Shown one piece after another: positions 12,897 to 41,415 of a stretch of DNA of 64,000 nt. The first letter of the stretch is position 1, and every line of letters starts with the position of its first letter. The notes under the pieces are model-generated. The model was given only the letters and a program-made list of their open reading frames with translations, did no database searches and had not been told where the DNA came from. The DNA comes from Ylistrum balloti (taxonomy: Eukaryota): contig NW_026782299.1 of NCBI RefSeq assembly GCF_031769215.1, positions 2,542,001-2,606,000 on the forward strand, written 5' to 3'. A program made the translations under genes and the position numbers.

Positions 12897-15547
12897 TCAA
12901 ACTGAAGTTGTCGCACGTAAAGAAATCGATGACGCTAATTCGTCCCAAAACACAACATTACCATGCAAGTCACCACGGGGATACTCGATATAGGTTTTGC
13001 TCTCAATAATATCCAGTAACGACAGTGGTAAATCTCGAGGCGGAATATCCTCATAGAACACCAATAAAAGGACAGAGTCGCCTCCCCTAGAATATATACT
13101 CTCCATTCGAGCCATGTTAAATTCGAAAATACACCAGTACGAATTAAGATAGTTCCGGGAGAGTATGATAACAGTTTTCCTGCTTTGGTGGATAGCGTTG
13201 GTGATGTTCTGGGCTATGTCTTCCCCTGGTATGAAGTCTCTTTGGTGCAGACAAAGTCGCAGCCCGTGATTGTCTTCCAAATGGATCAGCATCTCCTTTA
13301 CCACGAACATATAATCATCTGAACAATATGATATAAATGCATCATACAGGTAGTCATCATCGTCTTCCGCATTAACGACGGGTCTATAACCACGATACTG
13401 GGTCTTCGCCATGTAAAACAGATAACGCAGTTTCCACCTGTAGCGGTAGATCATACCAGAAATCACAAAGGTTACCGACAACAGAATCACTGAAGCACAC
13501 ACTGCTATGATACCTATATAACTATCACACGACTTACTTATTTCCAACAAGGTTGTATCAAAATTGGAAAACGTTATTTCTGTTCCGTTGGAGAAAGCAC
13601 ATTTGTATGTTAGAAAATGTTCAAACAAATCTTTGTTTCGACCTAACCATTTAAGGAAATCGAGTTCCTCACACGAGCAGTCCATACGATTCCCTTGCAA
13701 ATTAATGGTTAAATTGTTGTCCTTTAAGCTATCTATCTGGTCTCGTTGATCCCGATTTATTCTTCTAAGCTGATTATGGGTAAGATCGATATATTGTAGA
13801 TGTTTCATATGTGATATATCGAGACTTAACTCATTCAATGCGTTGTTACTCAAATTCAGTATCTGAAGTTCATGTTGGTTTCTGAAGAGCAGTGCCGGTA
13901 ATGTATATATGTGATTTCTAGATAGGTTGATAATTTTCAAACTCTGAAGAGTCTTGAATATGTTGCCGTTAACATCTTCGTAGAGCACCAACCCTAATAA
14001 ATTGTTTTGAATTAATAGTGTCTCTAAGACATTTTCGACCATAAAGAAATTTTCAGAGATGTGAGTACAGTAATTATTTGATAAATCGATATATTTCAAA
14101 AATGGCACGTTTACTATTGTCCCTTTCCATGAATGTAAGAAATTATTACTGACATCAATAACTGTGAGATTAATATTTCTAAAATCAATTGCACCGATTT
14201 CAAAATCAAAAGCATTATAACTATAGTAAAGTTCTCTAAGCGAAGGGGGCAGAGGATATGTAGATAAAATATGACTGTCATGATGCAATTTTAAGAGAGG
14301 GTTCCTGTTACAGTCGAGTAACTCTGTCGATACGCTGAAGGAAATTTTCTCATCTGACGATGGTGGTGCCCGCCAATCTTTACAATCACTTTTACCCGAT
14401 TGCAAATTGTGAGAATACTTTTGGTAATCCGCATGTACTATTTGAATACTTGGTAAAGACGACATTAGCTCAATAATGTATATGCCAAATGTTAGGCTAT
14501 TATATTTTGCTGATATGAATTCTAATGTTTTAGGAATTAATCCTGCCACGCCAACATCAAGCATAACCAAACGATTATTGTCAATGTACACATGTGTTAA
14601 GTTTGTGTTTTTCAGGTGTATAACATCTTCCCTGTATATAACTGTACTAGGTCCAAACGTACAATGTAAACCACTAATGTCTAAAATACGAATACGAGTA
14701 TATTGTAAATCATGTGTAACGTTCGGAAGTACTCGAAATGTCAGACATTCGTTGAAAGAAATATTTAGCGAATAGAGATTTGTCAATCCACGAAAAGTTC
14801 CAATGTCAATTTCATGAATATTGCAACTGGAGATATCTAAATATTTGATATTTGACATGTTTTGAAAGTAATCGAACCTTAATCTTCCTAGGTGACATAC
14901 TCCGCTGTTCCCAGATAAATCAAGGGTCCTCAACTTAGTCATCTGCAAGAACCTTCCGTCAAATCCGGATAAATCCACTCCATCTAAAAGTAATGTCTCA
15001 AGCATATTCAGTTTTGAAATGCTTACTGGGAAATGTAAGTTTCTTGATACATAATGAATGTTATTCTGTTGTATGTTCAAGTATCTTAATTGAGTCAATC
15101 CCTCAAATATATTTTCGGAGTAAATTGCGTTAGTATATCGAAGTTTGTTATCACTTAAATCTAAATATTGTAATTGTTTCATATCCTTAAAAGGAAATCC
15201 GATGAACATGTCTAAGTTGTTTCTCGATAGGTCCAAGTATTTAACCGTATCCGGAATTCCTTCACCTGAAATATTTTTTATATTGTTTCCATTCAGATGG
15301 ATCACAGTGACATTAGGATGAAACGTTGGAATCGCATCGATATTCAGATATGAACAGTCTGCCACTATGCTATTATCTTTAGAACTATGGCAATGACACA
15401 AGTCCTTAGATGTGCAATGGAATATAGAGATTTTTGAGGAAGTCGGTAATGACGCCAACGAGCCTGTCGTTGTATTCAAGTTATCCTTGCTGACATCAAA
15501 CCCTTGTATTTCTTGTACACTAATACAGCCAACGTACAACATAATAC
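12897..15547 (-). CDS. TLR: Toll-like receptor A, main exon (exon 2): LRRNT, LRRs, single LRRCT, TM, TIR (sccTLR type); 891 aa with exon 1
   Basis: LxxLxLxxN repeats, LRRCT GNRMDCSCEELDFLKWL, TM IGIIAVCASVILLSVTFVISGMIY, TIR box1 YDAFISY and BB loop RDFIPGEDI. Acceptor TTTTCCATTTCTAG| at 15548. Confidence 0.96.
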
Positions 15548-15702
15548 CTAGAAATGGAAAACAAAATTAAAAATGAGTTTATTGGATTAAGGGTCTATAT
15601 TTACTGTGTAATATTTCTAAAGTTGTCGGAAAGTAATACATATATACATCTATAACGTTGACATAGGATTCAGTCCGAGTCAAGGCCAGTATTTGTACTT
15701 AC

Positions 15703-15727
15703 CACAGCATATCTTTAATAAAGCCAT
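15703..15727 (-). CDS. TLR: TLR-A exon 1 (25 coding nt, MALLKICC-G), start of signal peptide
   Basis: ATGGCTTTATTAAAGATATGCTGTG|GTAAGT. The phase-1, 155-bp intron joins in frame to give MALLKICCGIMLYVGCISVQEIQG. A homologous exon lies upstream of TLR-B. Confidence 0.88.
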
Positions 15728-16714
15728 ATCGCTGTAACTGTGGACCTATCCCGAGAAAAACACTGGAAATATACACCTCTGTCAGTCAACCCGTTTTTAT
15801 TGTCGACAATCTACATATTGCTGAAAACAACTCCAACTTGACGTCGAGCCACACTCATGATGATTTCAGTTGCCAAGACAATAACAAGTGTGACACAATT
15901 TGCTTTTCCTTTTGTTATTATTTGACCATGAATTGTATGTATTGAATGTTGATAAGAAGAATGGAACATTTGCACACTTCACTATGTTGACTCTTTAAGG
16001 AAGCCTATTCAAATCACTGACAACCTGTTTTAATCCACAGCTTTTCTATGTAATCAATAAAGTATATGTTGACAAAAAACAGTCAATCCGAATGCCTACT
16101 TCAGGACGAAGGTACTTCAAAGAAAAATCCATATCATTCTCAATGTTACTAATATGTTGCACATATCACATGAAACCAAATAATTTATAATCTGTTAGGA
16201 GCTGAATCTGATATCATTTCGCTACATACCGCCACAGAATTATCCATTTTGACGTGTGATTTCACCAGATGTTAAAATGATATAACAGCCTGTGAACGCA
16301 CTACGAACAACATGCGTGACTAAAAGGGTCTTTTAAAATAGGTATACGAGCTATTGCACCCAATTACTGTAAGCTTTAAAAGCTATGATGAAACATGTTT
16401 CATAACTTTAATATAGTGACACGATGACTTGAAGTTGTTTAGACAATGGGTTTGTGACCGATTACTATATTTGTCCTTTCTTTTTGCCTTGTCGTATCTT
16501 TGATAATAATTTATAAAACTACATTAATGAATAAGGAAACATTTACGAATATGTTATGCTAGTATGAATTACGTCCTACTTCATGCATCTTGCACATGTG
16601 TGCCAGTAATTGTTCAAATTCAATAAGCTTGCTAATGTATGCCAGTAATTGTTCAAATTCAATAAGCTAATATGCATTTAGATAACATCAGACTTTAAAG
16701 TAAGACGGTGCGAA

Positions 16715-17030
16715 CGTTTGTATGTTGTTATGAGGTGTGACTTTGAAAGATGTTTGTGATCTTAGGAGTATGACTGGGAGAGGTGTTTGTAATTGTAGGG
16801 GTGTTTGTATGTGGTTGTAAGGTGTGTGTGACTATGAGAGGTGTTTGTGATTGCAGGAGTATGACTTGGAGAGGTGTTTGTAATTGTAGGTGTGTTTGTA
16901 TGTGGTTGTAAGGTATGTGTGGCTGTGAGAGATATTTGTGATTGTTGGTGTTTTTGTATGTGGTTGTAAGCTGTGTGTAGTTGAGAGAGGTGTTTGTGAT
17001 TGTAGGAATGTTTGTATGTGGTTATGAGGT
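16715..17030. repeat. Degenerate GT-rich tandem repeat upstream of TLR-A
   Basis: Recurring GAGAGGTGTTTGTAATTGTAGG/GTATGTGGTTGTAAG motifs. Explains the His/Thr-rich ORFs at 16762-17056. Confidence 0.8.
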
Positions 17031-18086
17031 ATTTGGCCTTGAACATTCCCAATCAAACTTCATACGAAGGTGTTTCTCCTACGTTGTCTAAGGTCTCCTT
17101 CTGAGTGTTTGATTTGGCTATATTGTATCTTTTAATGAATATATTTTTTGACTATTGGTTATAGTTTTTTCCTGTTGGCAAGATCATAATATAGTGCCGA
17201 TAAAAAAAATAGAAAAGTAACTTGATAAATATGTTGCGATTTCATTGTAATTTGTGTTTAAGCTTATCTTGGTAACCACTAAATAATTACTAAGTGTGCA
17301 ATCATATCATTGTCACGAAAACAACCCTACATAAGCATATTCTATTATCAAAATTACTGTATTGACGGTATTTGACGAACCAAACAGGTATACTAACGAG
17401 CACCAGACACCTCAAATTTCTTATCGCATAAATAGAATATTTCCCAATGTGATCGAGATGACAACAATAAAAGTTCCCTTTCAACGTGAGTTTGAGAAGA
17501 AAAATGGAGGAATATCGAATCAACTGTGACGTGTAAATACTGAATGATTTCGATGCAGGAATATTCATCTCCTGAAATGGAAAATTTACAATTGGAAATT
17601 GAAATCTTCATACTTATCATATAGCTTGTTTAAAAATGTCCCTGCTAATTTTGTCGCAAGAAAATATTTACGTAGGCAGTTGATGTGAAAGGATCGGGCA
17701 TGTTCTTGATTACCAATTCAGAGGAGTATATGTAATGGAAATTGAAGTATAAGAGTTATGTCCCTTGAATATGACTTGTGTAGTGGAAATTGAAGTATAA
17801 GAGTTATGTCACTTGAATATGATAATAGCTAATTACATAGGTTAATTTGTTCATCTAATGATTTTTGTCGATTAATACAAATGTTTATAATTCTGTAGTA
17901 AGATATGGAAAGGTATTCTGTACTATGTTAATATTTTAGTATGCATCATTTATGGTAAATTAAATACCAACGATTGACACACCTAATTAAAGAGTTTATT
18001 ATACATGTAAATAGAAATTACTTTGAATGATTGCGAGCGCTGTTATACTGACTGTTGGTAAAGCTTTCAGAGATACACAGACGACG

Positions 18087-18147
18087 AAACACTTCCTACC
18101 AAGTTTATGAAACTAAAAAAAAAAAAAAAAAACACTTCCTACCAAGT
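18087..18147 (+). mobile_element. Tiny retroposed insertion: 10 nt plus poly(A) between 18-bp direct repeats
   Basis: AAACACTTCCTACCAAGT (18087-18104) - TTATGAAACT - A run - AAACACTTCCTACCAAGT (18130-18147). Confidence 0.7.
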
Positions 18148-18371
18148 ACATAACACCGTTATTTGCAACAGGTGGTGGGTGAAAGTCTGAAATAGTGGCT
18201 TTTCCGAAACCGCTTGTCAAGCTGGTGCGAGGGCTGTTTAGTTCTCACCGAAGCTTGGACTTTTGACTGTGGATAGCTAGCGATAGGGTTAGGTTAGAAT
18301 ACGAGCAAGGGTTGACTTAGTTGGTAGGACAACCTAGTGCTTAGTCAGGACTGACTATATTGTTCGGTGAC

Positions 18372-20927
18372 TAGTTCAGTAGTTGGAACTAGGGTTAGGT
18401 GAAGTCACTGGGTGTCGAGCTTGCACTCACGCTCACATGCTAGTCGGAACAGTCTGTGTCGGGACAGCAGTCCATGTGAATACTAGTTCGTTCGTTAGTT
18501 TTATTGTTAACTCAGGTAGAGTTTGCTGTTACACGCTATATGTATATATCGGCATTTGTTAGCTAGTATCTCTGCAAGGAATCAAAGACTTACCCACCGT
18601 GTGCAAAGTTAGGCTGCACGTTACATATATTCGATGGACATACAAATAAATTTCATGTTATCAAAAAACAACACATCAACAATATATTCAATATATAAGT
18701 GACATTGAAGGACTTCGAAAGGACTTCACGATCAAATTTGTTGAGCACCTTTATAAATTCAGTCTCGTGGAAAACAAAAACAACTTAGTCAAAAGAGGGA
18801 CGACGTTTGTTCCTATTGGTATTTAAGTAGCCTGTTGGAAGATCTTACCACAAAAATCGATGAATGTATTGTTAACCATGAACTCAATCATCTTGATGAT
18901 CTGCTCTTCCGTTTATGAGTTGGACATGTTTTTCATTAAATAAGCTTACGTATAGGTCAAAACCATAGTAATGCTTCTTTGGAAAAGAAAAAGGGTCATC
19001 ACAAGAGAACGAAGGCGTTCCTTCAGTTTGAGCATGGTAGTGTACAGAGTAGAAAAAAGTCAAATATTCTTATAAAAGAAATGTTCTGTTTAGATGAACG
19101 AACCCGGACTATTTAGTCTATTTAGTCACAGTTTCCAAGAACCACGGAATGACCTAAATGGATATGGTGTAGTATGTACTGATTGTAAAAGCGAAAATGA
19201 TTGCTTGAAAGAAACCGAAACCTGTTTCAAACCACCAAATGCCGGCTCAAAGCTCTAAATGCAACGTTCATGCAACAAAGTACGGGTTGCAAACAACACA
19301 ATGTGGGTCGCAAACAACAAAGTACTTGTTTCAAAAGGAGATATCAAACAACCAAATCCATACTTCAAACAATATCATAAACAGTTGCATCAATGAAATA
19401 CGGGTTATATTCAAATAAAATAAAATTAAAAGCAATAAAAAAATCGCCGTCGAACACTTGCTTCGCATAGATGTTGTCTTGAGCGGGAGATTAGCGTACC
19501 GTCACGATAAATATTTTCACACACACTGAACCCCAATTTTCTATTGTTCAATTGGAAAATTGATTGAGTATACTGTATCAATGTTAGAGTTCCTAAAAAA
19601 CACTTTTATGATTTATTTATGATTTTATTTCTCAGAAAAACAGTTTCCTGGAACAATATATAAATAGACATTCTAAATTAAGAATTCTAAATATTTTCTC
19701 GAAATGTACCAACAACCTGCTGATGTATTATAACCTATAGGGGCATTTTCTGACAGGCTGTTAACACGTCTGTCATACCACATTTATGCTAAAAAATGCA
19801 TTAGTATGTTTCCGGTAATACATACAATATGTGCATATTTTACTCGATTCTGATTTGCTATAATGGTCTTATTTCAAACGAAACTTCAACTTCAAAGCTC
19901 AATTGATTGGTGCAAATAACATTTATTTGCAACTCATGTTCAAAAGCATATTGTGATCGTCTTAAATAACTTCTGTTCGTGATCATTCTGTTATGTTTAA
20001 TAACCCGAATAAGAATAACTTTCTTCTGTTCGTTTCTTTGTATAGAGTTTTGTAGCTGAGAACATTGTATTCTTCTTACACGTGAGGATATTCCTTTACA
20101 ATTGTCTTAGGTAGGACATAACATCTGCCTGTCACTGATGACAGTATCGTGGCTTGTACATTCACTACATTTTAGTTGGAGAAGGATCGCATTTAATACG
20201 AAATTCGGATTTACTACATGGCCTGCATGCGTATAAGCCTAGAAAGAAGCAATATGACGGACGCAAATACAAAAAGGCGACGAGGACCAAAAAGTGCCAG
20301 AAAGCGTAAGAGGAAGGAGTCAGACCACACAGGGCCCCACTAGTTCAGCGCCCGCTATTCACATAGATATTTCTCCCACAACAAAACGAATTACTAAGAC
20401 TGATTGTTAAAACTATATATCATGACTCCATAGAATCATTTACTGCAAACAAGAATTAGTAGAAAGGCGCAAAAGCAAGTGTCATACATAAGACATGTGC
20501 GTTTGAATGTTTTCATAATTCACACATGACTAGCCAGATGCATATATTTCGAGTGCCAGTTTTGCTTTGAAAGTCCTTGTGTTTTTAGTGGCATATATTT
20601 GATTATTATCGAATCGTTGCTTAACTCTAACCAAAGTTTGAGAAACTGGGATGTGGTTGTTATCTGTTATTCGAAACGTTTGGTTGAGCAATTTGACTTT
20701 GTGCTAATAATTAATTCGTGAACAATTGCTTTATTCCCTAAATTCCATGGAGCAGTTTGTTTAGTATTTGGATGTAATTATAATGTTATCTACGACCTCC
20801 TCCTTTCCCTTCAATCAAAACAGCATACAAATTAGGTCTGTTCAGCGTCATCGACGAAAGCAACCATATAAACATTGGTCAATCCAAGTAAGTAATGCCA
20901 CGCTCGCAAATGAGAACAATGCATACC
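18372..20927. repeat. Segmental duplication copy 1, left part (continues after the LTR element at 27950-28625)
   Basis: Near-identical to 32755-35199 and 36092-36186. One 17-bp indel; about 890 bp present only in copy 2. Confidence 0.95.
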
Positions 20928-21376
20928 TGTGATGTCGAGTGAGTCCAAAGAAATACAAACTAAACGCCTTTAATGAGTTCCTTTATTACATATACAAAGT
21001 TCCCAGTTCCTATAGCCATAGTTCACAATCATCACAAACACAGTGTAGGGGTTCTTGGTTGCACCTAGCTTGCGCCCCAACCTGCGGTAAAAAACTGAAA
21101 AATACAGAAATTAACCTGTCCTTAGCACATATTTTGCCTTTAGAGCCACAAAACAAACATATTTCAACAAAATTAATCAAATTTCAAACGTTTAAACCGT
21201 ATTAAAGTTACCTCATGGGTCACCTAAGCCTTGCTAAATCCGTAAGTCTGTTTCCTTTGGACTTTCACGTAAACATATCCCATGATGCATTTTTCCACGA
21301 TGTACAAAGAATGAACTCTGAACCCTGACCTGACTACCAGAGCAGACGGACAATATAAAACTAGCGTTTCACTACA
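20928..21376 (-). repeat. 3' LTR of BEL/Pao element
   Basis: 449 bp; three substitutions seen versus 27501-27949. The 20939-21205 ORF is an LTR by-product. Confidence 0.97.
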
Positions 21377-21542
21377 TTCCTCGCCTGATTGCTAAATCAC
21401 TACTACATTTAAACCCTGTAAACATTCATATTATTTATAACCCGATGAAAATATATAATATCAAAACTTATCTGAATAACAATAAACTAAAGTTTCTAAG
21501 CAATAAAATTCACTTGTCGCTGTCAATGTTCAACACAATAAT

Positions 21543-24500
21543 TCACTCTGCCATCAATAGTACTAACTGAGTAATAGGACGGATATACGAAACCGATCGT
21601 CCATTACGAATTGTCTTAACTCTGACTTTACGAACAAGACCATCGTGACTAGGAAAAACACATTCAACAATTCCCATTGGCCAGTCATTACGATGAGAGT
21701 CATGATCCTTCAGCAAAACAATGTCACCTTGTTTCAAGTTTGAACGTTCGTGATTCCACTTTTGTCGCGTTTGTAGCGATTGTAGATAGTCTCTTCTCCA
21801 CGCGTTCCAAAATTTCTGGGCCAATACCTGAACACATCGCCATTGGGATCGAAACATGTCTTTCACTGAGAAGTCTACCAAGGTTAGATCTACATTTGGA
21901 ACGTCAGTCTTTTGCGTAATGAGAGTACTTGGCGACAATACCACTGGGTTTTCAGGGTCGTCAGATACGGGTACCAGTGGTCGCTGGTTCACTATAGCAC
22001 ACGCTTCGGCTAGAAAAGTCGTAAGCACTTCATGCGTGAGGTGTTTAGTGTCAGTATTACGCAACATGTTGTCCAGAATCCTTCTAACGGTACCAATAAG
22101 CCGTTCCCAAGATCCGCCCATATGGGAGGCATATGGAGGATTAAAAGTCCATGTGATGCTTTCCTCTGAAAGAAAGTCTTTTACGGCTTTGTCCTCGACG
22201 TCAATAACATTCAAGTTAAGTTCCTTAACGGCTCCTACGAAGTTAGATCCTTTGTCCGACCTAATGTGCTTTACCGGTCCTCTGAGCGCGATGAATCTCC
22301 GCAGTGCGTTAATGAAGGAAGATGTGCTCATCTCCTCTACGACCTCAATATGTATCCCTCTCGATACCATGCAACAGAATATTATAGCCCAACGTTTTGC
22401 GTTAGCTTGTCCTCCCCTAGTTTTTCTCGCGCGCACATTCCATGGTCCAAACGCATCCAATCCAATGTAAGTGAAAGGCGGACATGGTGTCAAACGATCC
22501 TGCGGTAAAGTACACATTTTTTGTTCCACAAACTTTCCTCGGAGTTTCCTGCACACGACACAGTGATGTAAAATAGAGGAAATTAATCGCTTTCCTCCCA
22601 CTAGCCAATAACCAGAAGAACGTATTTTACCCTCCGTAATATGTCGGCCTTGGTGTTCCGATTTCTCGTGATAATGTCTCACGATTAGAGTAGCCACGTG
22701 ATGTTTTGCTGGGACAATGATCGGATCCTTTCCAGGTAAGTCAATGTCACTATTCTGAATCCTACCACCAATCCTCAGGAGCCCCTCGTCGTCTAGAAAC
22801 GGCGACAATTTCAACAAAGAATTGTTCCTGTTTAACGGCAGTCCTTTCTGCAAACAGTCGATTTCCATCGAATAAAACTCTTGTTGAACAACCTTCAGTA
22901 TGAGGTTCTTTGAATCGTTAGCAAAACGCAACACGTCTGGATTGTCTGTTCCGTTGTGATGACGATGCGCGACTTGTTTCAGTAAGGTTATTGCACTAAC
23001 CAACCTAGTCCATGACGAAAATCTCGCGAAACGGTCAGGATCGAGAGCGAAGTCCTTCCGAACGTGAGTTTTCATGACATTTGTTTCGTTGACGAACGTT
23101 ATTTCACCGTCGTCGTTACCGATCAACGGAAATACTTGGTCTCTATACGAACTTTGCAAATCACTCATGACGTCAACGGGTCCGTTCAACCACACTGACT
23201 TTCCAACGTCTTTCGCACGCATTGGCCTAGTCGCACTATCGGCAGGGTTACATTCACTAGAAACGAAACTCCACTGCTGTTTGGAAGATAACTTCAGAAT
23301 CTTGTCAATCCGATTAGCAACATAAACGAAGAAACGGCGCGTGTCGTTAAATATATACCCTAGTACTACCTGACTGTCGGTATAGTAGTAGGTGGCGTCA
23401 AACACAACATCGACGTGTTCGGATATAAATAAACCGAGTTCAGTAGCAAGAACAGCCGCGCATAGTTCTAGTCTTGGAATGGTATGTCCGTGGGAAGGCG
23501 CTACTTTCGATTTGCCAAGAACGTATCCAACAGAAGCATTTTCCTGTACGTCATAAATTTTCATGTATGCTACTGCGCCTATGGCATCCTTTGACGCGTC
23601 TGAGAATACGTGTAGTTCACGACGAATTGCCTTTTCCAATGACGAATTGGAGTAACATCTCGAAATTTCTAACTGTTCCAGATCTTTAAGCGAAGACCTC
23701 CATTTTTTCCAATCAGAGTTCAAGTCCGGAGGTAAAGGGTCATCCCAGTCAAGATCCTTTGACGATAACACATTTCGCATTAATAGTCTGCCTCCGAGAA
23801 TAACTGGTGCCACAAAGCCGAGGGGGTCGAATACACTATGTATTGTAGAAAGTACGCCTCGTTTGGTGAACGGTTTCACCTCATCAGAAACACTAAACGT
23901 GAACGTATCACAACCGACTTTCCAACGTAGTCCGAGACTCCTATGAACGATATCATCGAAGTCCATATCGCAAATTTCGCTGGTATCCTCTTTTGGAAAC
24001 TGCTTTAAAACATCAACACTGTTCGACGAGAACTTGTGCAAGTGAATGTTTCCGTTTTGCCGTAATCGAGCTTGAGTGTCTCTCAACAACTGCACTGCGT
24101 GACCTTCGTCAGATACAGAGGTCAACCCATCGTCAACGTAGAAGCTCTCTTTGACGAAACAACACACCTCGTCGCACGCGGAAGAATCGATATGGTCGCA
24201 AGCAGATTTCCTTAATCCAAGTGTGGCAATACACGGAGAAGACGAGTTGCCAAACACATGCACGCACATACGAAATTCCCTTAGCGGTTGTGTGGGATCA
24301 TTATCTTGAAACCATAAGAAACGTAGAAAGTTTCTGTCACGCTTGTGCACATAGAAGTTGAAGAACATCTGTTCAACATCGGCCATAATCGCAATTCGTT
24401 CCTTCCTGAATTTCATTAACACACCAACCAAATTGTTTATGAGATCCGGACCTGTCATGAGAATGTCGTTAAGCGAATGTCCATTAAACTTTGCCGCCGA

Positions 24501-25748
24501 ATCGAACACGACTCGGATTTTGTTGGGTTTTTGGGGATGATAAACCCCGAATATCGGTAGATACCATGCTTCCTCGCCGTCTTGTAACTCGGGAGCTACC
24601 TCTGCATGCTCCTTGTCAAAAATGTTTTGCATAAACGCACAAAACTGTTCGCGCTTAGTAGGATTTTTCAGTAACGACTTTCGTAGATTTTCTGCGCGAT
24701 GCCTTGCCTGATCCATATTGTTTGACAAAGTAGGTCGTTCCTTTTTTAGCGGTAACGGTGCACTCCAATTACCGTACTCGTCCTTAATAAACTCCCCTTC
24801 CATGACACGCATGAATTCCTTATCCTGTTGCGAGTAACCAGGAATATCATCGAATTTTGTTCTTTGAAATATGTCCATTCCAATTGGCAACTTATCGGAT
24901 TTTTCAAACTGAGCCTTGAAGTAATTCGGACACGGATCCATGAGAGTAGGTCTGCCATCCGGTAAAACGACCGTTTTGCTCACAGTTATGACCGTAGGTT
25001 TGTGAACGAGACCTAGGCACGATTCTCCTACAACTACCCAACCGAATTTTAATTTCTGTGCATATGGTTCACGTTCATGTCCAGTTCGCTGTTCCAACAC
25101 ATGATGCGCCGAAATGAGATCTCTGCCAACGAGAAGCAATATGGGCGTATCGTTTTCATACTCTGGGATAAGATGAGCAATGTCCTGCATGTGACTATAG
25201 TGTCGTGCAACTTCCGGTGTAGGTATTTCCTGTTTCACATTCGGAATATGATTGCATTCTGTAATCAACGGTAATTTTAATGAGTATTCCTTGTCCAATG
25301 ATTCCATTACGTATCCGCTGCCTTGCCTCCCGGTTACCTGAATTTCACCGGCACATGATGAAAGTACGTATCCGGTTTCCGTAGAATGATCTCCAAAATA
25401 ATCGAAGAACTCACTTTTGGCCAATGTCCGATTGCTCTGCTCATCTATAATGGCATAAGCACGCAACACATTATTAAGTTGTCCGTCCTTGTAGATATTT
25501 ACTAACACCGTTTTTGCACACGATTTCCCCACGAAGGGACCGGTTTCACCGCACAACTGTGTACACTTGGAATTTATCTTACGATTGTCTCCCCTGATAC
25601 TTGTCCTTTCCTCGCCGTGAGACTGACGGGGCTGATATTTGTCATCATGAAACATAGTGCAATGCGATGAACCTTTACACACAGTACAGATTACTTTTTC
25701 TGTACAGTCCTTGGCCAAATGTTTGTCCTTACAACACTTAAAGCACAC
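21543..25748 (-). CDS. pol: BEL/Pao pol region: Cys-His knuckles, aspartic protease, RT, RNase H, integrase
   Basis: CFKCCKDKHLAKDC (CX2CX4HX4C), protease IIDEQSNRT, RT YVDDGL, RNase H LHVFSDAS...IPRLELCAA...DSQVVLGYI, integrase HHCC plus GLDAFGP/SDKGSNF/WERLIG. The ORF start is a GTG at a frame break, not a true start. Confidence 0.96.
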   Translation of the reverse strand: MCFKCCKDKHLAKDCTEKVICTVCKGSSHCTMFHDDKYQPRQSHGEERTSIRGDNRKINSKCTQLCGETGPFVGKSCAKTVLVNIYKDGQLNNVLRAYAIIDEQSNRTLAKSEFFDYFGDHSTETGYVLSSCAGEIQVTGRQGSGYVMESLDKEYSLKLPLITECNHIPNVKQEIPTPEVARHYSHMQDIAHLIPEYENDTPILLLVGRDLISAHHVLEQRTGHEREPYAQKLKFGWVVVGESCLGLVHKPTVITVSKTVVLPDGRPTLMDPCPNYFKAQFEKSDKLPIGMDIFQRTKFDDIPGYSQQDKEFMRVMEGEFIKDEYGNWSAPLPLKKERPTLSNNMDQARHRAENLRKSLLKNPTKREQFCAFMQNIFDKEHAEVAPELQDGEEAWYLPIFGVYHPQKPNKIRVVFDSAAKFNGHSLNDILMTGPDLINNLVGVLMKFRKERIAIMADVEQMFFNFYVHKRDRNFLRFLWFQDNDPTQPLREFRMCVHVFGNSSSPCIATLGLRKSACDHIDSSACDEVCCFVKESFYVDDGLTSVSDEGHAVQLLRDTQARLRQNGNIHLHKFSSNSVDVLKQFPKEDTSEICDMDFDDIVHRSLGLRWKVGCDTFTFSVSDEVKPFTKRGVLSTIHSVFDPLGFVAPVILGGRLLMRNVLSSKDLDWDDPLPPDLNSDWKKWRSSLKDLEQLEISRCYSNSSLEKAIRRELHVFSDASKDAIGAVAYMKIYDVQENASVGYVLGKSKVAPSHGHTIPRLELCAAVLATELGLFISEHVDVVFDATYYYTDSQVVLGYIFNDTRRFFVYVANRIDKILKLSSKQQWSFVSSECNPADSATRPMRAKDVGKSVWLNGPVDVMSDLQSSYRDQVFPLIGNDDGEITFVNETNVMKTHVRKDFALDPDRFARFSSWTRLVSAITLLKQVAHRHHNGTDNPDVLRFANDSKNLILKVVQQEFYSMEIDCLQKGLPLNRNNSLLKLSPFLDDEGLLRIGGRIQNSDIDLPGKDPIIVPAKHHVATLIVRHYHEKSEHQGRHITEGKIRSSGYWLVGGKRLISSILHHCVVCRKLRGKFVEQKMCTLPQDRLTPCPPFTYIGLDAFGPWNVRARKTRGGQANAKRWAIIFCCMVSRGIHIEVVEEMSTSSFINALRRFIALRGPVKHIRSDKGSNFVGAVKELNLNVIDVEDKAVKDFLSEESITWTFNPPYASHMGGSWERLIGTVRRILDNMLRNTDTKHLTHEVLTTFLAEACAIVNQRPLVPVSDDPENPVVLSPSTLITQKTDVPNVDLTLVDFSVKDMFRSQWRCVQVLAQKFWNAWRRDYLQSLQTRQKWNHERSNLKQGDIVLLKDHDSHRNDWPMGIVECVFPSHDGLVRKVRVKTIRNGRSVSYIRPITQLVLLMAE

Positions 25749-27489
25749 GCCGTGTTTTAAGAATTTCCCTCTTTTCGTCCTTGGATTTCGATAGAAACAG
25801 GTGGCAATCTGATAACAAATGCTTCACTTCTCTCGCACTGTCATGAAGTGGGCACAAAAATGCTGTAGGCACATTATTAACTTCCGTTTTCTTTGAAAAG
25901 ACGTATGCATTCCTACTTCCGGTAGACGCAGTACGACGTTGTTCTTTGCTGACGCTAGGTACCGCAGTACCATCGGTGTAATTGAAACTCGGGTTGTTCA
26001 TTCGCGAGCTCATTTCCTGTATGAACCTCTCGAAAACACTGAATTTCGGATATGTAACATTGTGCTCGGTTTGATATCTGCACGCATAGTCAGTCCATTT
26101 GTTTTGTATGAACACGGGTAACTTGCAAACAATTGGGTTTATACCGCTGGACGAATCGTAGTACGCCATTATCGAGCTGAACGCCGTGTTTTCCTTTACT
26201 GCCTGAATTTCCGCCAATATGTTCGAAAGATCAAACAATTTCTGACCATCTCGGTTCGTTAATTTCGGGAATTTGTTTAGCCTTTCCCTCAAAGATAACT
26301 CAATTTGCTCGGGCGCGCCGTACTTCTCACTGAGCCTAGTCCAGATTTTACACAAGGCTTGGGGTGGGTCGTGTATGTTTGCAGCACGTAGACTTACAGC
26401 CTGTTTTCGAGATTCTGGCCCCAACCATTTCGATAATAAGTCTAATTGTTCTTGAGGGCTTACATCAAGTTCCTTTACAACATTTAGGAATGACATTTTC
26501 CAGACACGATACTCCTCGGGTTTATCAGTAAACTGAGTGAGTCTACCCATAAGCAAGTCTTTCTTTAGCATAAATTTGGTCAAATCATTCAGTCCAGTTA
26601 CACACTGACCTGGGGTGAATTCTCGAGCCTCAACGTTTAACGGTACTTTATGTGAATAGGGGTCGAATGTTTCATAACCGGTGTTCAAATTTTCGGCTTG
26701 ACTTTGCACAAATTCAACTGTCCTAGACTTCCTGTGTAACTCCTCATCATCCGACGGTGCTTGTGAACAATGTCTGATAGGGCTACCAGTGTCAATAACG
26801 TCATCCATAGCCTTAAGCTCGGCTGCTGCCTCGTCCAGTTCTCTTTGTGATTTTAACAGCTGAAGGGATTTTTGCAATTCGGCCTCTTTCTCAACAAATT
26901 TTAGCCTCACTTTGGCCGCTTCCAATTTCGCTCGTTGTTTCATATATACTGAACTGACCCTGGAGATGTTAGTTATGCTAGAACGCACTGAGGTTTTACT
27001 TGTTTTCGACTTTATTGACATAATATCCGAAACGCCGTTTTTATATTCACTTACACTATGCCGAGGATTTTCCTCGACTACAAACCCCTGTGAAATGTTA
27101 TCGACCACAGATACAGTTTGAACTGGTTTTATTTTGTCAATAAATGATTGAATTTGGTCCAAAACCGTGTCACACTGGGATTTTAATGTTTCCACAGCTG
27201 TCATATGAGATAATAATTCTTCCTGGCCTTGTTCCGTTCTACTTTCTTCCAAATATTTACTGAATTTGGTTGAAACTTGTTCATAGGATTCATATGATTG
27301 GGTAATGTCTGATGCCAAGGATTTTAATTCATCCAAGTTCATATTTTCATACTCAATATCAGTTATGAGACAATCTAAATTTCTGTATAAATTTAACAGT
27401 CTATGTTTATACTTGCCGACTGTGTCCTCAAATGCCTGATGTGCCTTTTCCGTCATTTTGATGGTTCTTTTTCCCGGGTTTTCAGCCAT
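25738..27489 (-). CDS. gag: BEL/Pao gag region
   Basis: The first ATG (MAENPGKRTIK) lies 11 nt past the 5' LTR. Coiled-coil N-terminus, FTDKPEEYRVWKMSF gag core, first knuckle CPLH...H....C. Ends out of frame with pol. Confidence 0.9.
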   Translation of the reverse strand: MAENPGKRTIKMTEKAHQAFEDTVGKYKHRLLNLYRNLDCLITDIEYENMNLDELKSLASDITQSYESYEQVSTKFSKYLEESRTEQGQEELLSHMTAVETLKSQCDTVLDQIQSFIDKIKPVQTVSVVDNISQGFVVEENPRHSVSEYKNGVSDIMSIKSKTSKTSVRSSITNISRVSSVYMKQRAKLEAAKVRLKFVEKEAELQKSLQLLKSQRELDEAAAELKAMDDVIDTGSPIRHCSQAPSDDEELHRKSRTVEFVQSQAENLNTGYETFDPYSHKVPLNVEAREFTPGQCVTGLNDLTKFMLKKDLLMGRLTQFTDKPEEYRVWKMSFLNVVKELDVSPQEQLDLLSKWLGPESRKQAVSLRAANIHDPPQALCKIWTRLSEKYGAPEQIELSLRERLNKFPKLTNRDGQKLFDLSNILAEIQAVKENTAFSSIMAYYDSSSGINPIVCKLPVFIQNKWTDYACRYQTEHNVTYPKFSVFERFIQEMSSRMNNPSFNYTDGTAVPSVSKEQRRTASTGSRNAYVFSKKTEVNNVPTAFLCPLHDSAREVKHLLSDCHLFLSKSKDEKREILKTRRVL

Positions 27490-27500
27490 GAGTTTTTTAC

Positions 27501-27949
27501 TGTGATGTCGAGTGAGTCCAAAGAAATACAAACTAAACGCCTTTAATGAGTTCCTTTATTACATATACAAAGTTCCCAGTTCCTATAGCCATAGTTCACA
27601 ATCATCACAAACACAGTGTAGGGGTTCTTGGTTGCACCTAGCTTGCGCCCCAACCTGCGGTAAAAAACTGAAAAATACAGAAATTAACCTGTCCTTAGCA
27701 CATATTTTGTCTTTAGAGCCACAAAACAAACATATTTCAACAAAATTAATCAAATTTCAAACGTTTAAACCGTATTAAAGTTACCTCATTGGTCACCTAA
27801 GCCTTGCTAAATCCGTAAGTCTGTTTCTTTTGGACTTTCACGTAAACATATCCCATGATGCATTTTTCCACGATGTACAAAGAATGAACTCTGAACCCTG
27901 ACCTGACTACCAGAGCAGACGGACAATATAAAACTAGCGTTTCACTACA
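27501..27949 (-). repeat. 5' LTR of BEL/Pao element
   Basis: Direct repeat of 20928-21376. AATAAA on the minus strand at 27560-27555. Confidence 0.97.
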
Positions 27950-28491
27950 ATACCACAACGGCACCAACAGGCAAACTAACGAACATCTAACACGTTCAGC
28001 TTTATGTCGCATAAAGAAGTAGGATATTTCTCAGTGCGATCACTATGGCGACCATAAAACTTCCCAATAATTATCATCAATCTGCATTTTTGGAATCCTT
28101 GTGTTACTGTATACTTTTACGGGAAGGAACTATAACAAAAATTAAAAATCATCCTCAGGTAATTTTATCTCAATTAAACACAGCTGACGATTTTTGCATG
28201 TCGCTAAGTTACAATTTTACAAGTTAATACAAGCAACACAGAATACAGAGACCCATATGTTATTATGGTGTACTTAAAACTTAAAACCGTCGGTCGAAAA
28301 TTTCAACTCGGTTTAAATTATGACTTTTTTAACACGAGTAACATACAACCACGTGTGCATGAGACCGCCATTTCGGAAAGGTATTGCGTTTGAAAAAAAA
28401 ATCTTTACAAAAAGAGGACAGAACATGTCTGATATTATGAAATGTTACCATTCACAAGAGCATGTATTAAAAATAACCCTCATAAAACACA

Positions 28492-31160
28492 TCATACTGT
28501 AGTTGTCGCACGTGAAGAAATGGATGTTGCTAGTTCGTCCCAAAACACAACATTACCATGCAAGTCACCACGGGGATACTCGATATAGGTTTTGCTCTCA
28601 ATAATATCCAGTAACGACAGTGGTAAATCTCGAGGCGGAATATCCTCATAGAACACCAATAAAAGGACAGAGTCGCCTCCCCTAGAATATATACTCTCCA
28701 TTCGAGCCATGTTAAATTCGAACATACACCAGTACGAATTAAGATAGTTCCGGGAGAGTATGATAACAGTTTTCCTGCTTTGGTGGATAGCGTTGGTGAT
28801 GTTCTGGGCTATGTCTTCCCCTGGTATGAAGTCTCTTTGGTGCAGACAAAGTCGCAGCCCGTGATTGTCTTCCAAATGGATCAGCATCTCCTTTACCACG
28901 AACATGTAATCATCTGAACAATATGATATAAATGCATCATACAGGTAGTCATCATCGTCTTCCGCATTAACAACGGGTCTATAACCGCGATACTGGGTCT
29001 TGGCCATGTAAAACAGATAACGCAGTTTCCACCTGTAGCGGTAGATCATACCAGAAATCACAAAGGTTACCGACAACAGAATCACTGAAGCACACACTGC
29101 TATGATACCTATATAACTATCACACGACTTACTTATTTCCAACAAGGTTGTATCAAAATTGGAAAACGTTATTTCTGTTCCGTTGGAGAAAGCACATTTG
29201 TATGTTAGAAAATGTTCAAACAAATCTTTTTTTCGACCTAACCATTTAAGGAAATCGAGTTCCTCACACGAGCAGTCCATACGATTCCCTTGCAAATTAA
29301 TGGTTAAATTGTTGTCCTTTAAACTATCTATCTGGTCTCGTTGGTCCTGTTTGATTCCTCTAAGTTGATTATGGGTAATATCGAGATATTGAAGATGTTT
29401 CATATGTGATATATCGAGACTTAACTCATTCAATGCGTTGTTACTCAAATTCAGTATCTGAAGTTCATGTTGGTTTTTGAGAAGTAAGGCTGGTAAGGTG
29501 TATATGTGATTTCTAGATAGGTCCAAAGTTTTTAAACTCATAAGGTGCCTGAATATTTTACCATTAACATCTTTATATAGCACCAATCCTAATAAATTGT
29601 TCTGAACTAGCAGTGTTTCTAATCTATTTTTATCCATTAAGAAGTTATCAGAAATATAGGAACAATAATTATTGGATAAATCAGCATGTTTAAGGTGTTT
29701 AAGATTAAGTAGAGGTCCTTTCCATGAATGAAATAAATTATTACTGAAATCCATTATTGTGACGTTATTGTCGCGGAAATGAACCCGACCGATTTCAAAA
29801 TTCATTGCATTATTACTGTAGTACAATTCTCTAAGTGATTGTGGAACCCTAATTTGTGTGATTGTATCTTTGTTTTTAGAGCTCTTTATATGTAATAATG
29901 GATTTCTATTACAACTGAGCAATTCAGTAGTTTGTCCGAAGGTCACCAAGTCACGTGACGGTGGGGCACGCCAATCATGACAATCACTACTTCCAACTTC
30001 CAAATTATGAGGATTTCCCTGATGTTCTGCGTGTATTATTTCAATATTCGGTAACGAGGACACGAACTCGATATAATATAGCCCATATGATAGATCATTG
30101 TCTTTAACTGATAAGAAAGTCAATGACTCAGGAAGTTTTCCTATCGCGCCTATATCAAACATAGATAACCGATTGCTCTCTAGGTATAAATCCGTTAAGC
30201 TGGTATTTTTCAAATGAATAATATCGTTCCTGTATATAACTGTACTAGGTCCAAACGTACAATGTAAACCACTAATGTCTAAAATACGAGTACGAGTATA
30301 TTGTAAATCATGTGTAACGTTTGGAAGTACTCGAAATGTCAGACATTCGTTGAAAGAAATATTTAGAAAATGAAGTTGTGTCAATCCACGAAAAGTTCCA
30401 ATTTCAATTCCATGAATATTGCAACTGGAGATATCTAAATATTTGATATTTGACATGTTTTGAAAGTAATCGAACCTCAATCTTCCTAAGTGACATACTC
30501 CGCTGTTCCCAGATAAATCAAGGGTCCTCAACTTAGTCATCTGCAAGAACCTTCCGTCAAATCCGGATAAATCCACTCCATCTAAAAGTAATGTCTCAAG
30601 CATATTCAGTTTTGTAATGCTTACTGGGAAATGTAAGTTTCTTGATACATAATGAATGTTATTCTGTTTTATGTTCAAGTATCTTAATTGAGTCAATCCC
30701 TCAAATATATTTTCGGGGTAAATTGCGTTAGTATATCGAAGCTTGTTACCACGTAAATCTAAATATTGTAATTGTCTCATATCCTTAAACGGAAAATCGT
30801 GAAAATTTTCCAACTGGTTTCCAGATAGGTCCAAATATGAAATAGTTTCCGGAATTCCTTCACTGGAAAAGTTTTGGAGATGATTTCCCTGAAGATATAT
30901 TTCTGTAACGGTGGGCTTAAATTGGGGAATTGCATCGATATTCATGAAAGAGCAGTCTGCGACAAGAACGCCGACTTTAGGACTGTAACAGCGACAGATA
31001 TTTCCGACTGTACAATTTTCCCTCAATGTGGTGTTTTCTGTTCCGATCAATTGAGTTGGGTTTGTTATTGCAGTAACATTCGTTCTGTTCGATTTATATC
31101 GATTGGGGAGCCAACTTTGTACTCTGTTCATCTTAAAACATCCAATAAAAAGGAGAATAC
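28492..31160 (-). CDS. TLR: Toll-like receptor B, main exon (exon 2), sccTLR; 897 aa with exon 1
   Basis: Same architecture as TLR-A. Acceptor TATTTTTTCAG| at 31161; the exon opens with GILLFIGCFK ahead of the ORF-track Met at 31131. Confidence 0.96.
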
Positions 31161-31670: not shown

Positions 31671-31695
31671 CAAAGCATATCTTCAATAAATCCAT
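31671..31695 (-). CDS. TLR: TLR-B exon 1 (25 coding nt, MDLLKICF-G)
   Basis: ATGGATTTATTGAAGATATGCTTTG|GTAAGT; phase-1, 510-bp intron; homologous to TLR-A exon 1. Confidence 0.88.
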
Positions 31696-41400: not shown

Positions 41401-41415
41401 CACTGAAAGGGTTAA

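What the first reader, a model, noticed from the sequence alone, without database searches (positions are those of the whole stretch)
12897..31160. TLR-A/TLR-B mosaic: two homogenised tracts flank a protected divergent block
Seen: A 12942-13880 vs B 28537-29475 (late LRRs, LRRCT, TM, TIR) and A 14631-15190 vs B 30229-30790 are almost identical even at third codon positions. A 13880-14630 vs B 29475-30229 and the N-terminus differ heavily, including synonymous sites. Established: vertebrate TLR1/TLR6 and avian TLR1/TLR2 pairs show gene conversion that spares the ligand-specificity LRRs. Inference: a convergent invertebrate system that keeps signalling and dimer surfaces matched while recognition diverges.
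Basis: partly seen in the sequence, partly recalled or inferred. Interest (0 to 1): 0.7.

Follow-up and report, generated by a model that had tools for sequence, protein, structure and literature searches.

The report
Partial gene conversion between scallop TLRs
Two neighbouring immune-receptor (Toll-like receptor) genes of a scallop are old duplicates that have recently copied two stretches of sequence from one another while the tip and the middle of the sensing part stayed different. This repeats in a mollusc a pattern known from vertebrate TLR1/TLR6.

Summary
Observation confirmed; interpretation partly supported. The window is from the scallop Ylistrum balloti. TLR-A (exon 2, 12897-15547) and TLR-B (exon 2, 28492-31160) are intact LRR-TM-TIR genes on the minus strand, 15.6 kb apart.

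Synonymous divergence (dS) is about 0.05 in two tracts: A 14631-15177 (LRR3-9) and A 12939-13881 (last two LRRs, LRRCT, TM, TIR). It is 1.45-1.5 in the central block (A 13882-14630, LRR10-17) and above 2 at the N-terminus. A versus its Pecten maximus orthologue is uniform (1.3-1.6).

A permutation test, block trees (A+B 100/100 in the tracts; A+B rejected in the central block, AU p=0.02) and unalignable introns and flanks all point one way. These are ancient paralogues recently homogenised by interlocus gene conversion, probably A into B.

The same two-tract pattern recurs in a second Y. balloti pair and an Argopecten irradians pair. All three share a boundary near residue 300.

Whether the central block is "protected" by selection is untested. 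Conversion tracts also coincide with the more conserved DNA, so homology dependence alone could explain the pattern. No read-level check of the assembly was possible. The scan earlier noted part-gene conversion in another gene family of this genome (s1-244098). This is a new member of a known kind.

The parts
15703..15727 (-). TLR-A exon 1 (ATG plus 8 codons of the signal peptide, MALLKICCG; donor GTAAGT)
   Evidence: The RefSeq protein P0001 (891 aa, Ylistrum balloti 'toll-like receptor 4') starts here.
12897..15547 (-). TLR-A exon 2: rest of the signal peptide, LRRNT, about 19 LRRs, LRRCT, TM (aa 678-698 of the ORF), TIR, stop
   Evidence: ORF; Pfam LRR_8 and TIR; acceptor AG at 15548-15549; AlphaFold2 model with pLDDT 84 that matches TLR3/4/5/8 ectodomains.
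31671..31695 (-). TLR-B exon 1 (MDLLKICFG; donor GTAAGT)
   Evidence: Found by similarity to A exon 1. Joining it to exon 2 in frame gives an 897-aa open product.
28492..31160 (-). TLR-B exon 2, same architecture as A, intact
   Evidence: ORF; Pfam; acceptor AG at 31161-31162.
14631..15177 (-). Converted tract 1 in A (LRR3-LRR9, aa 123-304); partner in B is 30229-30775
   Evidence: 18 differences in 547 nt; dS 0.049, dN/dS 0.64. The HMM low-divergence state covers residues 118-304.
13882..14630 (-). Unconverted central block in A (LRR10-LRR17 plus a 30-residue low-confidence loop at aa 397-426); partner in B is 29477-30228
   Evidence: dS 1.45-1.49, dN/dS 0.19. A groups with Pecten maximus P0002, and the A+B clade is rejected with AU p=0.0195.
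12939..13881 (-). Converted tract 2 in A (last two LRRs, LRRCT, TM, TIR; aa 555-868); partner in B is 28534-29476
   Evidence: 16 differences in 943 nt; dS 0.048. A+B form a clade with 100/99 support.
13728..13797 (-). Small divergent patch inside tract 2 (last LRR): 10 differences in 70 nt, flanked by an 84-nt stretch with no differences
   Evidence: It is either an unconverted island or the junction of two conversion events.
12711..12938 (-). Last 13 codons and 186 nt of the 3' flank of A, about 83-87% identical to B 28310-28533. Intermediate divergence, probably the trace of an older and longer conversion.
   Evidence: (tail dS 0.42). No similarity is found beyond 12711.
15178..15547 (-). 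Unconverted N-terminal part of A exon 2 (signal peptide end, LRRNT, LRR1-2); partner in B is 30776-31160
   Evidence: dS 2.3 or more, with an intermediate zone (dS 0.5-0.6) next to tract 1.
20927..27949 (-). BEL/Pao LTR retrotransposon between A and B, 543 nt downstream of the B stop codon. It raises the A-B distance from about 8.6 to 15.6 kb.
   Evidence: 450-bp LTRs 99.3% identical. Target-site duplication (TSD) ATACC, with the empty site preserved at about 36180. Pfam Peptidase_A17, rve, RVT_1, DUF5641 and DUF1759.
32755..36856 (-). Recent (98.5-99.4% identical) second copy of the spacer downstream of B plus the last 134 nt of the B coding sequence: remnant of a third, B-derived TLR copy
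   Evidence: Self-BLAST: 18372-20924 plus 27950-28625 match 32755-35199 plus 36092-36856. The fragment is 100% identical to B at the 3' end.
36857..37222 (+). Inverted TIR fragment abutting the truncated copy (fold-back), about 3.5% diverged from A and B

Best explanation
TLR-A and TLR-B are old tandem paralogues. Their duplication is about as old as, or older than, the split of Ylistrum from Pecten.

Shown: two stretches of their single large coding exon have recently been made nearly identical by interlocus (ectopic) gene conversion. These are LRR3-9, and the stretch from the last two LRRs to near the end of the TIR domain. The signal-peptide/LRRNT/LRR1-2 part, the central LRR10-17 block, the extreme C-terminus, the intron and the flanks were not overwritten in the recent events.

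Inferred mechanism: a double-strand break in one gene is repaired with the paralogue, 8.6-15.6 kb away on the same strand, as the template. Each tract ends where the two sequences become too different to pair. Regions that keep converting stay similar and so can convert again. Regions that once escaped diverge for good.

Inferred with moderate support: the tracts are of the A type, so B was the acceptor.

Consequence, shown at sequence level: the two receptors have virtually the same TM and TIR (signalling) module and the same LRR3-9, but different N-terminal caps and central LRRs.

The process is recurrent in this scallop TLR subfamily. Two other paralogue pairs show the same two-tract map.
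For: - dS for A-B by block is 2.3+ / 0.049 / 1.49 / 0.048. dS for A versus the P. maximus orthologue is uniform at 1.32 / 1.61 / 1.27 / 1.48.
- Permutation test: A-B concordant runs of 80, 74, 68 and 60 sites against a permutation maximum of 31. Orthologue pairs are not significant. Chi-square p = 2e-52.
- Trees: in the tracts (A,B) has 100/100 support and is sister to Pmax_P0002 (87/88). In the N-terminus plus central block, A groups with Pmax_P0002 (84/86) and B lies outside. AU rejects A+B with p = 0.0195 and 0.027.
- Similarity stops at the coding region. The intron and 5' flanks do not align. The 3' flank is only 83% identical for 186 nt and then unrelated. This excludes a recent whole-gene duplication.
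- No other locus in the 648-Mb assembly is closer than 69% (nt) to either gene, so there is no donor for the divergent blocks.
- The 6 residual differences in the tract 2 core are all at third codon positions. That is expected of real evolution, not of random error.
- Recurrence: Y. balloti C211/C645 (flanks unrelated) and A. irradians P0007/P0008 (800 kb apart, inverted) have low-divergence segments at residues 145-296 plus 453-825 and at 233-306 plus 644-876. For A/B they are 118-304 plus 553-881.
- The locus is recombinationally active: there is a 98.5-99.4% identical partial third copy and a fold-back fragment.
Against:
- B has no clear orthologue in other scallops and its position in the central-block tree is unresolved. 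The A+Pecten node has only 84-86% support, and the AU test was run after the tree had been seen.
- dS in the unconverted blocks is near saturation, so ages are only rough.
- With one genome per species, conversion cannot be separated from double unequal crossing-over.
- Expression of B is unverified. RefSeq models it as a chimera with the downstream retrotransposon.
Confidence: 0.85

Rival explanations
1. Selection-maintained modular concerted evolution. Conversion in LRR3-9 and in LRR18-TIR is favoured because both receptors must fit the same partners (each other, a co-receptor, MyD88-type adaptors). Conversion of the N-terminus and the central LRRs is removed by selection because those parts carry different ligand specificities.
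For: The same two regions are homogenised and the same central region spared in three independent pairs from two genera. They share a boundary at residues 297-307; a crude estimate puts chance coincidence at about 1-2%. The central block is kept under purifying selection in both genes (dN/dS 0.19), so both versions are in use. The map is close to that of mammalian TLR1/TLR6, where this argument was made (PMC2077338).
Against: The converted tracts are also the most conserved DNA of the subfamily. The shared boundary sits exactly where baseline identity falls from about 75% to 63%, so homology dependence alone predicts it. The other tract limits differ between pairs (118/145/233 and 553/453/644). 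No enrichment of A/B differences on the concave-face LRR positions was seen (crude, small numbers). No ligand, partner or expression data exist. This reading adds to the best explanation rather than excluding it.
Confidence: 0.3
2. Assembly or polishing artefact. The two genes are really diverged throughout (or moderately diverged in the tracts), and reads of one copy were used to build or polish the other.
For: Bivalve genomes are highly heterozygous and repeat-rich. The 98.5-99.4% identical spacer copy nearby shows that the region is hard to assemble. Reads could not be examined.
Against: - The tracts are not identical: they hold 34 scattered differences, with a third-position bias in the tract 2 core (6 of 6).
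- The mosaic boundaries are sharp and lie inside one ORF that stays intact in both copies.
- The same pattern occurs in a different assembly of another species (A. irradians GCA_041381155.1) and between two other contigs of this genome.
- Polishing cannot turn 67% identity into 98%.
Confidence: 0.04
3. Recent tandem duplication (dS about 0.05), followed by replacement of the N-terminus and central block of one copy by sequence from a third, divergent paralogue. Alternatively, runaway divergence of those blocks.
For: The cluster does duplicate: there is a B-derived truncated third copy. TLR families in bivalves are large.
Against: - Introns, promoters and 3' flanks of A and B are unrelated, which a recent duplication would not give.
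- No donor closer than 55-61% (aa) exists for either central block.
- Divergence of the blocks is at synonymous sites too (dS 1.45), with dN/dS 0.19, so it is age and not accelerated protein evolution.
Confidence: 0.04
4. Reciprocal unequal crossing-over within a formerly larger tandem array, rather than non-reciprocal conversion, assembled a chimeric B from pieces of A-type and B-type genes.
For: Remnants of further copies and a recent unit duplication lie next to B. Unequal exchange and conversion share the same intermediates.
Against: Two separate internal tracts need at least three or four exchanges, all in register and all leaving exactly two intact genes with their own flanks. The non-tandem pairs (different contigs; 800 kb apart and inverted) show the same map and cannot arise by simple unequal crossing-over.
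Confidence: 0.07

Closest known systems
Gene conversion between mammalian TLR1 and TLR6 (Kruithof et al. 2007, PMC2077338) and within the vertebrate TLR1 family, including avian TLR1A/B and TLR2A/B (Huang et al. 2011, PMC3125219)
   Same: - Tandem TLR paralogues, with paralogues more alike than orthologues in a defined segment.
- The homogenised 3' segment covers the last LRRs, the C-terminal cap, the TM and most of the TIR.
- The extreme C-terminus and the N-terminal and central LRRs escape.
- Independent recurrence in several lineages with similar limits.
   Different: - A protostome (bivalve) TLR subfamily with no orthology to TLR1/6.
- A second, separate converted tract in the ectodomain (LRR3-9), so the unconverted recognition part is split into an N-terminal cap and a central block.
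- The pattern also occurs in pairs that are not adjacent (800 kb apart and inverted; different contigs).
- No known ligand, heterodimer partner or domain-swap data.
Part-gene conversion in other clustered gene families of this same genome (scan note s1-244098: pore cassette of acetylcholine-receptor-like channel genes)
   Same: A short, functionally constrained module is kept near-identical among otherwise diverged clustered paralogues in Y. balloti.
   Different: A different gene family with a much shorter tract (about 210-250 nt). That note was not re-examined here.
Vertebrate single-cysteine-cluster (V-type) TLR ectodomains (TLR3, TLR4, TLR5, TLR8 structures)
   Same: Horseshoe LRR ectodomain with LRRNT and LRRCT, one TM and a C-terminal TIR. 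Foldseek E-values are 1e-15 to 1e-21.
   Different: Only 15-19% sequence identity. RefSeq's name 'toll-like receptor 4' is an automatic label, not orthology. A low-confidence 30-residue insertion lies between LRR12 and LRR13.

Membership tests
Toll-like receptor (LRR ectodomain - TM - TIR) | Extracellular leucine-rich repeats with N- and C-terminal caps | tested here: met
   Pfam LRR_8, LRR_4 and LRR_14 in both proteins. About 19 LRR motifs were found. The AlphaFold2 model is a horseshoe that matches TLR3/4/5/8.
Toll-like receptor (LRR ectodomain - TM - TIR) | Single transmembrane helix followed by a cytoplasmic TIR domain | tested here: met
   Hydrophobic segment at aa 678-698. Pfam TIR and TIR_2 with E = 1e-18 in both proteins.
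Interlocus gene conversion | Sharp heterogeneity of synonymous divergence between the paralogues, while orthologue dS is uniform along the gene | tested here: met
   A-B dS is 0.05 against 1.5 to above 2. A-Pecten dS is 1.3-1.6 in all blocks. Chi-square p = 2e-52.
Interlocus gene conversion | Significantly long identical fragments (GENECONV/Sawyer-type test) | tested here: met
   My own implementation: 0 of 2000-5000 permutations reach the observed runs. Control pairs are not significant.
Interlocus gene conversion | Phylogenetic incongruence: tracts group by species, unconverted parts by paralogue | tested here: met
   Tracts: (A,B) 100/100. Unconverted parts: A+Pmax_P0002 84/86, with A+B rejected by AU at p=0.02-0.03. 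Support is moderate, and no B-type orthologue was found.
Interlocus gene conversion | Non-coding flanks and the intron not homogenised (this excludes a young duplication) | tested here: met
   No alignment upstream of exon 2. The 3' flank is 83% identical for 186 nt and then unrelated.
Interlocus gene conversion | The two copies are real and separate in the DNA of one individual (reads span each mosaic) | not testable with these tools
There are no independent contigs.
TLR1/TLR6-type conversion that spares ligand-specificity LRRs | Converted region comprises the last LRRs, C-terminal cap, TM and most of the TIR; the extreme C-terminus is excluded | tested here: met
   Tract 2 is aa 555-868. The last 13 codons have dS 0.42. 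Compared with PMC2077338.
TLR1/TLR6-type conversion that spares ligand-specificity LRRs | Independent events in several lineages with conserved boundaries | tested here: inconclusive
   Three pairs in two genera share the boundary at residues 297-307, but the other limits vary. A fourth pair (P. maximus P0009/P0123) is homogeneous apart from its N-terminus.
TLR1/TLR6-type conversion that spares ligand-specificity LRRs | The spared block determines ligand discrimination, and the paralogues share a dimer partner | not testable with these tools
   No ligand or partner is known for these scallop TLRs.

The most novel reading that the evidence does not exclude
In the scallop TLR subfamility examined here, paralogues are held as modular receptors by selection. 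A common chassis (LRR3-9 plus LRR18-TIR) is repeatedly re-synchronised by conversion, even between loci hundreds of kilobases apart. Two specificity modules (the N-terminal cap and LRR10-17 with its variable loop) are kept distinct, with a hard boundary at residue ~300 conserved across genera. This would be an invertebrate, independently evolved counterpart of the TLR1/TLR6 arrangement. It would also point directly to the ligand-discriminating parts of mollusc TLRs, which are still unknown.
Probability: 0.25. Interest if true: 0.65.

Novelty: new member of a known kind. Interest (0 to 1): 0.45.

Why it matters
Bivalves have greatly expanded TLR repertoires, and almost nothing is known about what the individual receptors recognise. 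A conversion map that recurs in independent paralogue pairs divides the protein, without any experiment, into parts that are kept alike and parts that are allowed or required to differ. It therefore nominates the N-terminal cap and LRR10-17 for domain-swap and ligand-screening work.

It is also a practical caution. Trees built from TIR domains or whole proteins will make such paralogues look like young species-specific duplicates, when their recognition parts are as old as the genera. Full-text searches found no report of TLR gene conversion in molluscs. The vertebrate precedent makes the phenomenon itself expected rather than surprising.

Tried and rejected
- Independent contigs holding exactly protein A or the B ORF: none on record.
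- A donor for the divergent blocks in the same genome: none closer than 69% nt or 55-61% aa.
- A B-type orthologue in other scallops: a search restricted to B residues 1-552 gave the same set of proteins as A, none specifically B-like.
- Haplotig explanation for the second Y. balloti pair: rejected, because only the coding region aligns.
- Synonymous-site constraint as the cause of low dS: rejected by the uniform orthologue dS.
- Enrichment of A/B differences at concave-face LRR positions: a crude motif-based count showed nothing clear, and no claim is made.
- Foldseek against the PDB gave generic TLR ectodomains only and no specific assignment.
- Literature on TLR conversion in molluscs or echinoderms: nothing found. 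The sea-urchin TLR paper PMC3367398 does not mention conversion or recombination. The amphioxus preprint uses GENECONV for LTRs only.
- Complex prediction was not used. The TIR domains are virtually identical, so an A-B TIR pair is a homodimer question, and I make no binding claim.

Full report
**What is there.** The window is G000:C442:2542001-2606000 of a 648-Mb assembly. The best protein hit, 100% identical, is RefSeq 'toll-like receptor 4 [Ylistrum balloti]', a scallop (P0001).

Two long ORFs lie on the minus strand, 12897-15542 (881 aa, TLR-A) and 28492-31131 (879 aa, TLR-B). Both have LRR_8/LRR_4 and TIR/TIR_2 Pfam domains. Each is the large second exon of a two-exon gene:
- A exon 1 is 15727-15703 (MALLKICCG, donor GTAAGT) and exon 2 starts at 15547. 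This reproduces P0001.
- B exon 1 is 31695-31671 (MDLLKICFG, donor GTAAGT) and exon 2 starts at 31160, giving an open 897-aa product.

All database searches used exon 2 alone, by reference. The joined exon 1 plus exon 2 products were only checked for frame continuity inside a script and were not sent to any search tool.

An AlphaFold2 model of A (pLDDT 84) is a TLR horseshoe with TM and TIR, plus a low-confidence 30-residue loop at aa 397-426. Foldseek finds TLR5/8/4/3 at 15-19% identity. The RefSeq name 'TLR4' is therefore a label, not orthology.

A global alignment and the list of all differences give the following map.

| Segment | A coordinates | B coordinates | Result |
|---|---|---|---|
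| Tract 1 | 14631-15177 | 30229-30775 | 18 differences in 547 nt |
| Central block | 13882-14630 | 29477-30228 | about 68% identical, two in-frame indels |
| Tract 2 | 12939-13881 | 28534-29476 | 16 differences in 943 nt |
| Last 13 codons plus 186 nt of 3' flank | 12711-12938 | 28310-28533 | 83-87% identical, then nothing |
| Upstream of about 15178 | 15178-15542 | 30776-31160 | identity falls to 50-75% |

In tract 2, only 6 of the differences lie in the 789-nt core, and all 6 are at third codon positions. The intron and 5' flanks do not align.

dS is 2.3 or more at the N-terminus, 0.049 in tract 1, 1.49 in the central block, 0.048 in tract 2 and 0.42 in the tail. dN/dS in the central block is 0.19. 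Third-position differences across blocks give chi-square 243, p = 2e-52.

By LRR motifs, tract 1 is LRR3-9 and the central block is LRR10-17. Tract 2 is the last two LRRs, LRRCT, TM and TIR.

**Why this is conversion of old paralogues.**
- *Orthologue control.* I fetched the DNA of the closest orthologue, Pecten maximus P0002. dS between A and this gene is uniform: 1.32, 1.61, 1.27 and 1.48 in the four blocks. Low A-B dS is therefore not synonymous constraint. The A-B central block (1.45) is as diverged as the two genera.
- *Permutation test.* In a Sawyer-type permutation of polymorphic sites, A-B has concordant runs of 80, 74, 68 and 60 sites against a maximum of 31 in 2000 permutations. None of the orthologue or distant-paralogue pairs is significant.
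- *Block trees with 14 scallop TLRs.* In the tracts, (A,B) has 100/100 support and is sister to P0002 (87/88). In the central block, alone or with the alignable N-terminus, A joins P0002 (84/80 and 84/86) and B stands apart. The AU test rejects an A+B clade (p = 0.0195 and 0.027). Caveats: support is moderate, B's exact place is unresolved, and the AU test followed inspection of the tree.
- *No recent duplication, no donor.* The flanks are unrelated, which excludes a recent duplication. No locus in the genome could have donated either divergent block. The next paralogues (C645, C211) are 69% identical in nt and 51-61% in aa.
- *Direction.* Because both tracts are of the type found in A's orthologue, B was probably the acceptor. 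This is an inference.

**Fine structure suggests repeated events.**
- Both tracts have the same third-position divergence: 7 of 182-187 sites and 12 of 314-316 sites, about 3.8%.
- A 70-nt patch in the last LRR (13728-13797) carries 10 differences next to 84 nt with none.
- A 12-nt cluster lies at 14769-14780.
- Zones of intermediate divergence adjoin the tracts on the outside: codons about 90-135 with dS 0.5-0.6, and the tail plus 3' UTR at 13-17%.
- This looks like older, longer tracts overlain by younger ones.
- Tract 1 has more replacement changes (dN/dS 0.64) than tract 2 (0.22), on small numbers.

**The neighbourhood is recombinationally active.**
- A BEL/Pao LTR retrotransposon (20927-27949) lies between the genes. 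Its LTRs are 450 bp and 99.3% identical, its TSD is ATACC, and the empty site is preserved in the duplicate spacer. Without it the genes were about 8.6 kb apart.
- The spacer downstream of B plus the last 134 nt of B recur at 32755-36856 with 98.5-99.4% identity. This is the remnant of a third, B-derived copy.
- That remnant abuts an inverted TIR fragment (36857-37222) that is 3.5% diverged from A and B.

**The pattern recurs.** Sliding pS and a two-state HMM on third positions, in residue numbers of A, give the following low-divergence segments.

| Pair | 5' low segment | 3' low segment |
|---|---|---|
| A/B | 118-304 | 553-881 |
| Y. balloti C211/C645 (flanks unrelated, so not haplotigs) | 145-296 | 453-825 |
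| Argopecten irradians P0007/P0008 (same chromosome, about 800 kb apart, opposite orientation) | 233-306 | 644-876 |

Both extra pairs are significant in the permutation test. All three share the 3' limit of the first tract at residues 297-307. By a crude count of possible boundary positions, that coincidence has a chance of roughly 1-2%. The other limits differ. A fourth pair (P. maximus P0009/P0123, 8 Mb apart) is homogeneous except for its N-terminus.

**What remains open is the reason for the map.** Among pairs that do not convert, baseline DNA identity is 69-71% in the two tract regions, against 62-65% at the N-terminus and in the central block. It drops from about 75% to about 63% exactly at residue ~300. 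Homology-dependent conversion therefore predicts the same tracts and the same shared boundary without any selection for 'matched surfaces'.

Conversely, the central block is maintained by purifying selection in both genes. The map is also very close to that of mammalian TLR1/TLR6, where co-evolution with shared partners was proposed (PMC2077338). The two readings are not exclusive and cannot be separated with one genome per species.

**Limits.** Arguments against an artefact are indirect:
- scattered differences that respect codon position;
- intact ORFs in both copies;
- the same map in another species' assembly and between other contigs.

Expression is unknown. RefSeq models B as LOC132554958 (P0135), a chimera of B's C-terminal half with the retrotransposon's gag-like ORF. 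That model is either an annotation error or read-through transcription.

**Verdict.** It is interlocus gene conversion between ancient tandem TLR paralogues, in two tracts, and it is recurrent in the subfamily. It is a new member of a known kind (TLR1/TLR6-type partial concerted evolution) in a mollusc. I found no earlier report for molluscs. The same scan has noted part-gene conversion in another gene family of this genome (s1-244098, not re-tested).

Noticed in passing
G000:C211:817446-819880 and G000:C645:793841-796313 (loci L010, L011): A second Y. balloti TLR pair on different contigs shows the same two-tract mosaic. dS by block is 0.50 / 0.25 / 0.33 / 0.09, and low third-position divergence covers residues 145-296 and 453-825. 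The flanks do not align, so these are not haplotigs.
   Followed up: partly
L024:10001-12634 and L025:10001-13100 (Argopecten irradians CM084265.1, about 800 kb apart, opposite strands): Paralogues P0007 and P0008 have near-identical TM/TIR (third-position difference 0-0.12 over residues 644-876) and a second low-divergence segment at residues 233-306. Elsewhere the difference is 0.3-0.6. Conversion therefore seems to act over long distances and in inverted orientation.
   Followed up: partly
window 25741-29754 (-): RefSeq protein LOC132554958 (P0135, 831 aa) is a chimera. Residues 1-~410 are the C-terminal half of TLR-B (29754-28495). Residues 409-831 are the gag-like ORF of the downstream LTR retrotransposon (27009-25741). 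This is either a mis-annotation or read-through transcription. The full B gene is not in the protein database.
   Followed up: partly
window 20927-27949 (-): An apparently intact BEL/Pao LTR retrotransposon with 450-bp LTRs (3 differences), TG..CA ends, a 5-bp TSD (ATACC) and ORFs of 597 aa (DUF1759) and 1401 aa (Peptidase_A17, RT, integrase, DUF5641). It inserted after the spacer was duplicated. Described only.
   Followed up: partly
window 36723-37222: A truncated B-derived 3' end (36723-36856) abuts an inverted TIR fragment (36857-37222), giving a fold-back of about 134 nt arms plus extra sequence. It is the subject of scan note s1-258834. The inverted arm is 3.5% diverged from A and B and so comes from an older or different copy.
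   Followed up: partly
window 14265-14354 (-), aa 397-426 of TLR-A: A 30-residue stretch of very low model confidence lies between LRR12 and LRR13, inside the unconverted block. It is flanked by cysteines and is highly variable in the family. It may be an exposed loop, with a position reminiscent of the insertion loop of TLR7-9. No function was tested.
   Followed up: no
window 35199-36092: An insertion of about 890 bp is present in the second spacer copy and absent from the first (20833). It was not characterised.
   Followed up: no
window 63403-63768 (-) and L023:11364-11732: A translated match (51-59% aa) links an ORF at the right end of the window to a stretch 2 kb upstream of the P. maximus orthologue's coding exon. 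It may be a conserved neighbour or a shared repeat.
   Followed up: no
window 1689-5038, 40925-41401, 41688-42808, 45522-45889: Long tandem-repeat arrays are visible in the self-comparison: a 3.3-kb array of about 43-bp units at 1689-5038, and arrays with units of about 35, 66 and 64 bp.
   Followed up: no
L026 and L027 (Pecten maximus LR736850.1, 8 Mb apart): TLRs P0009 and P0123 are nearly identical at third positions from residue about 81 to the end but unrelated at the N-terminus. P0123's locus has an 832-codon open frame that is longer than the annotated 556-aa product.
   Followed up: partly
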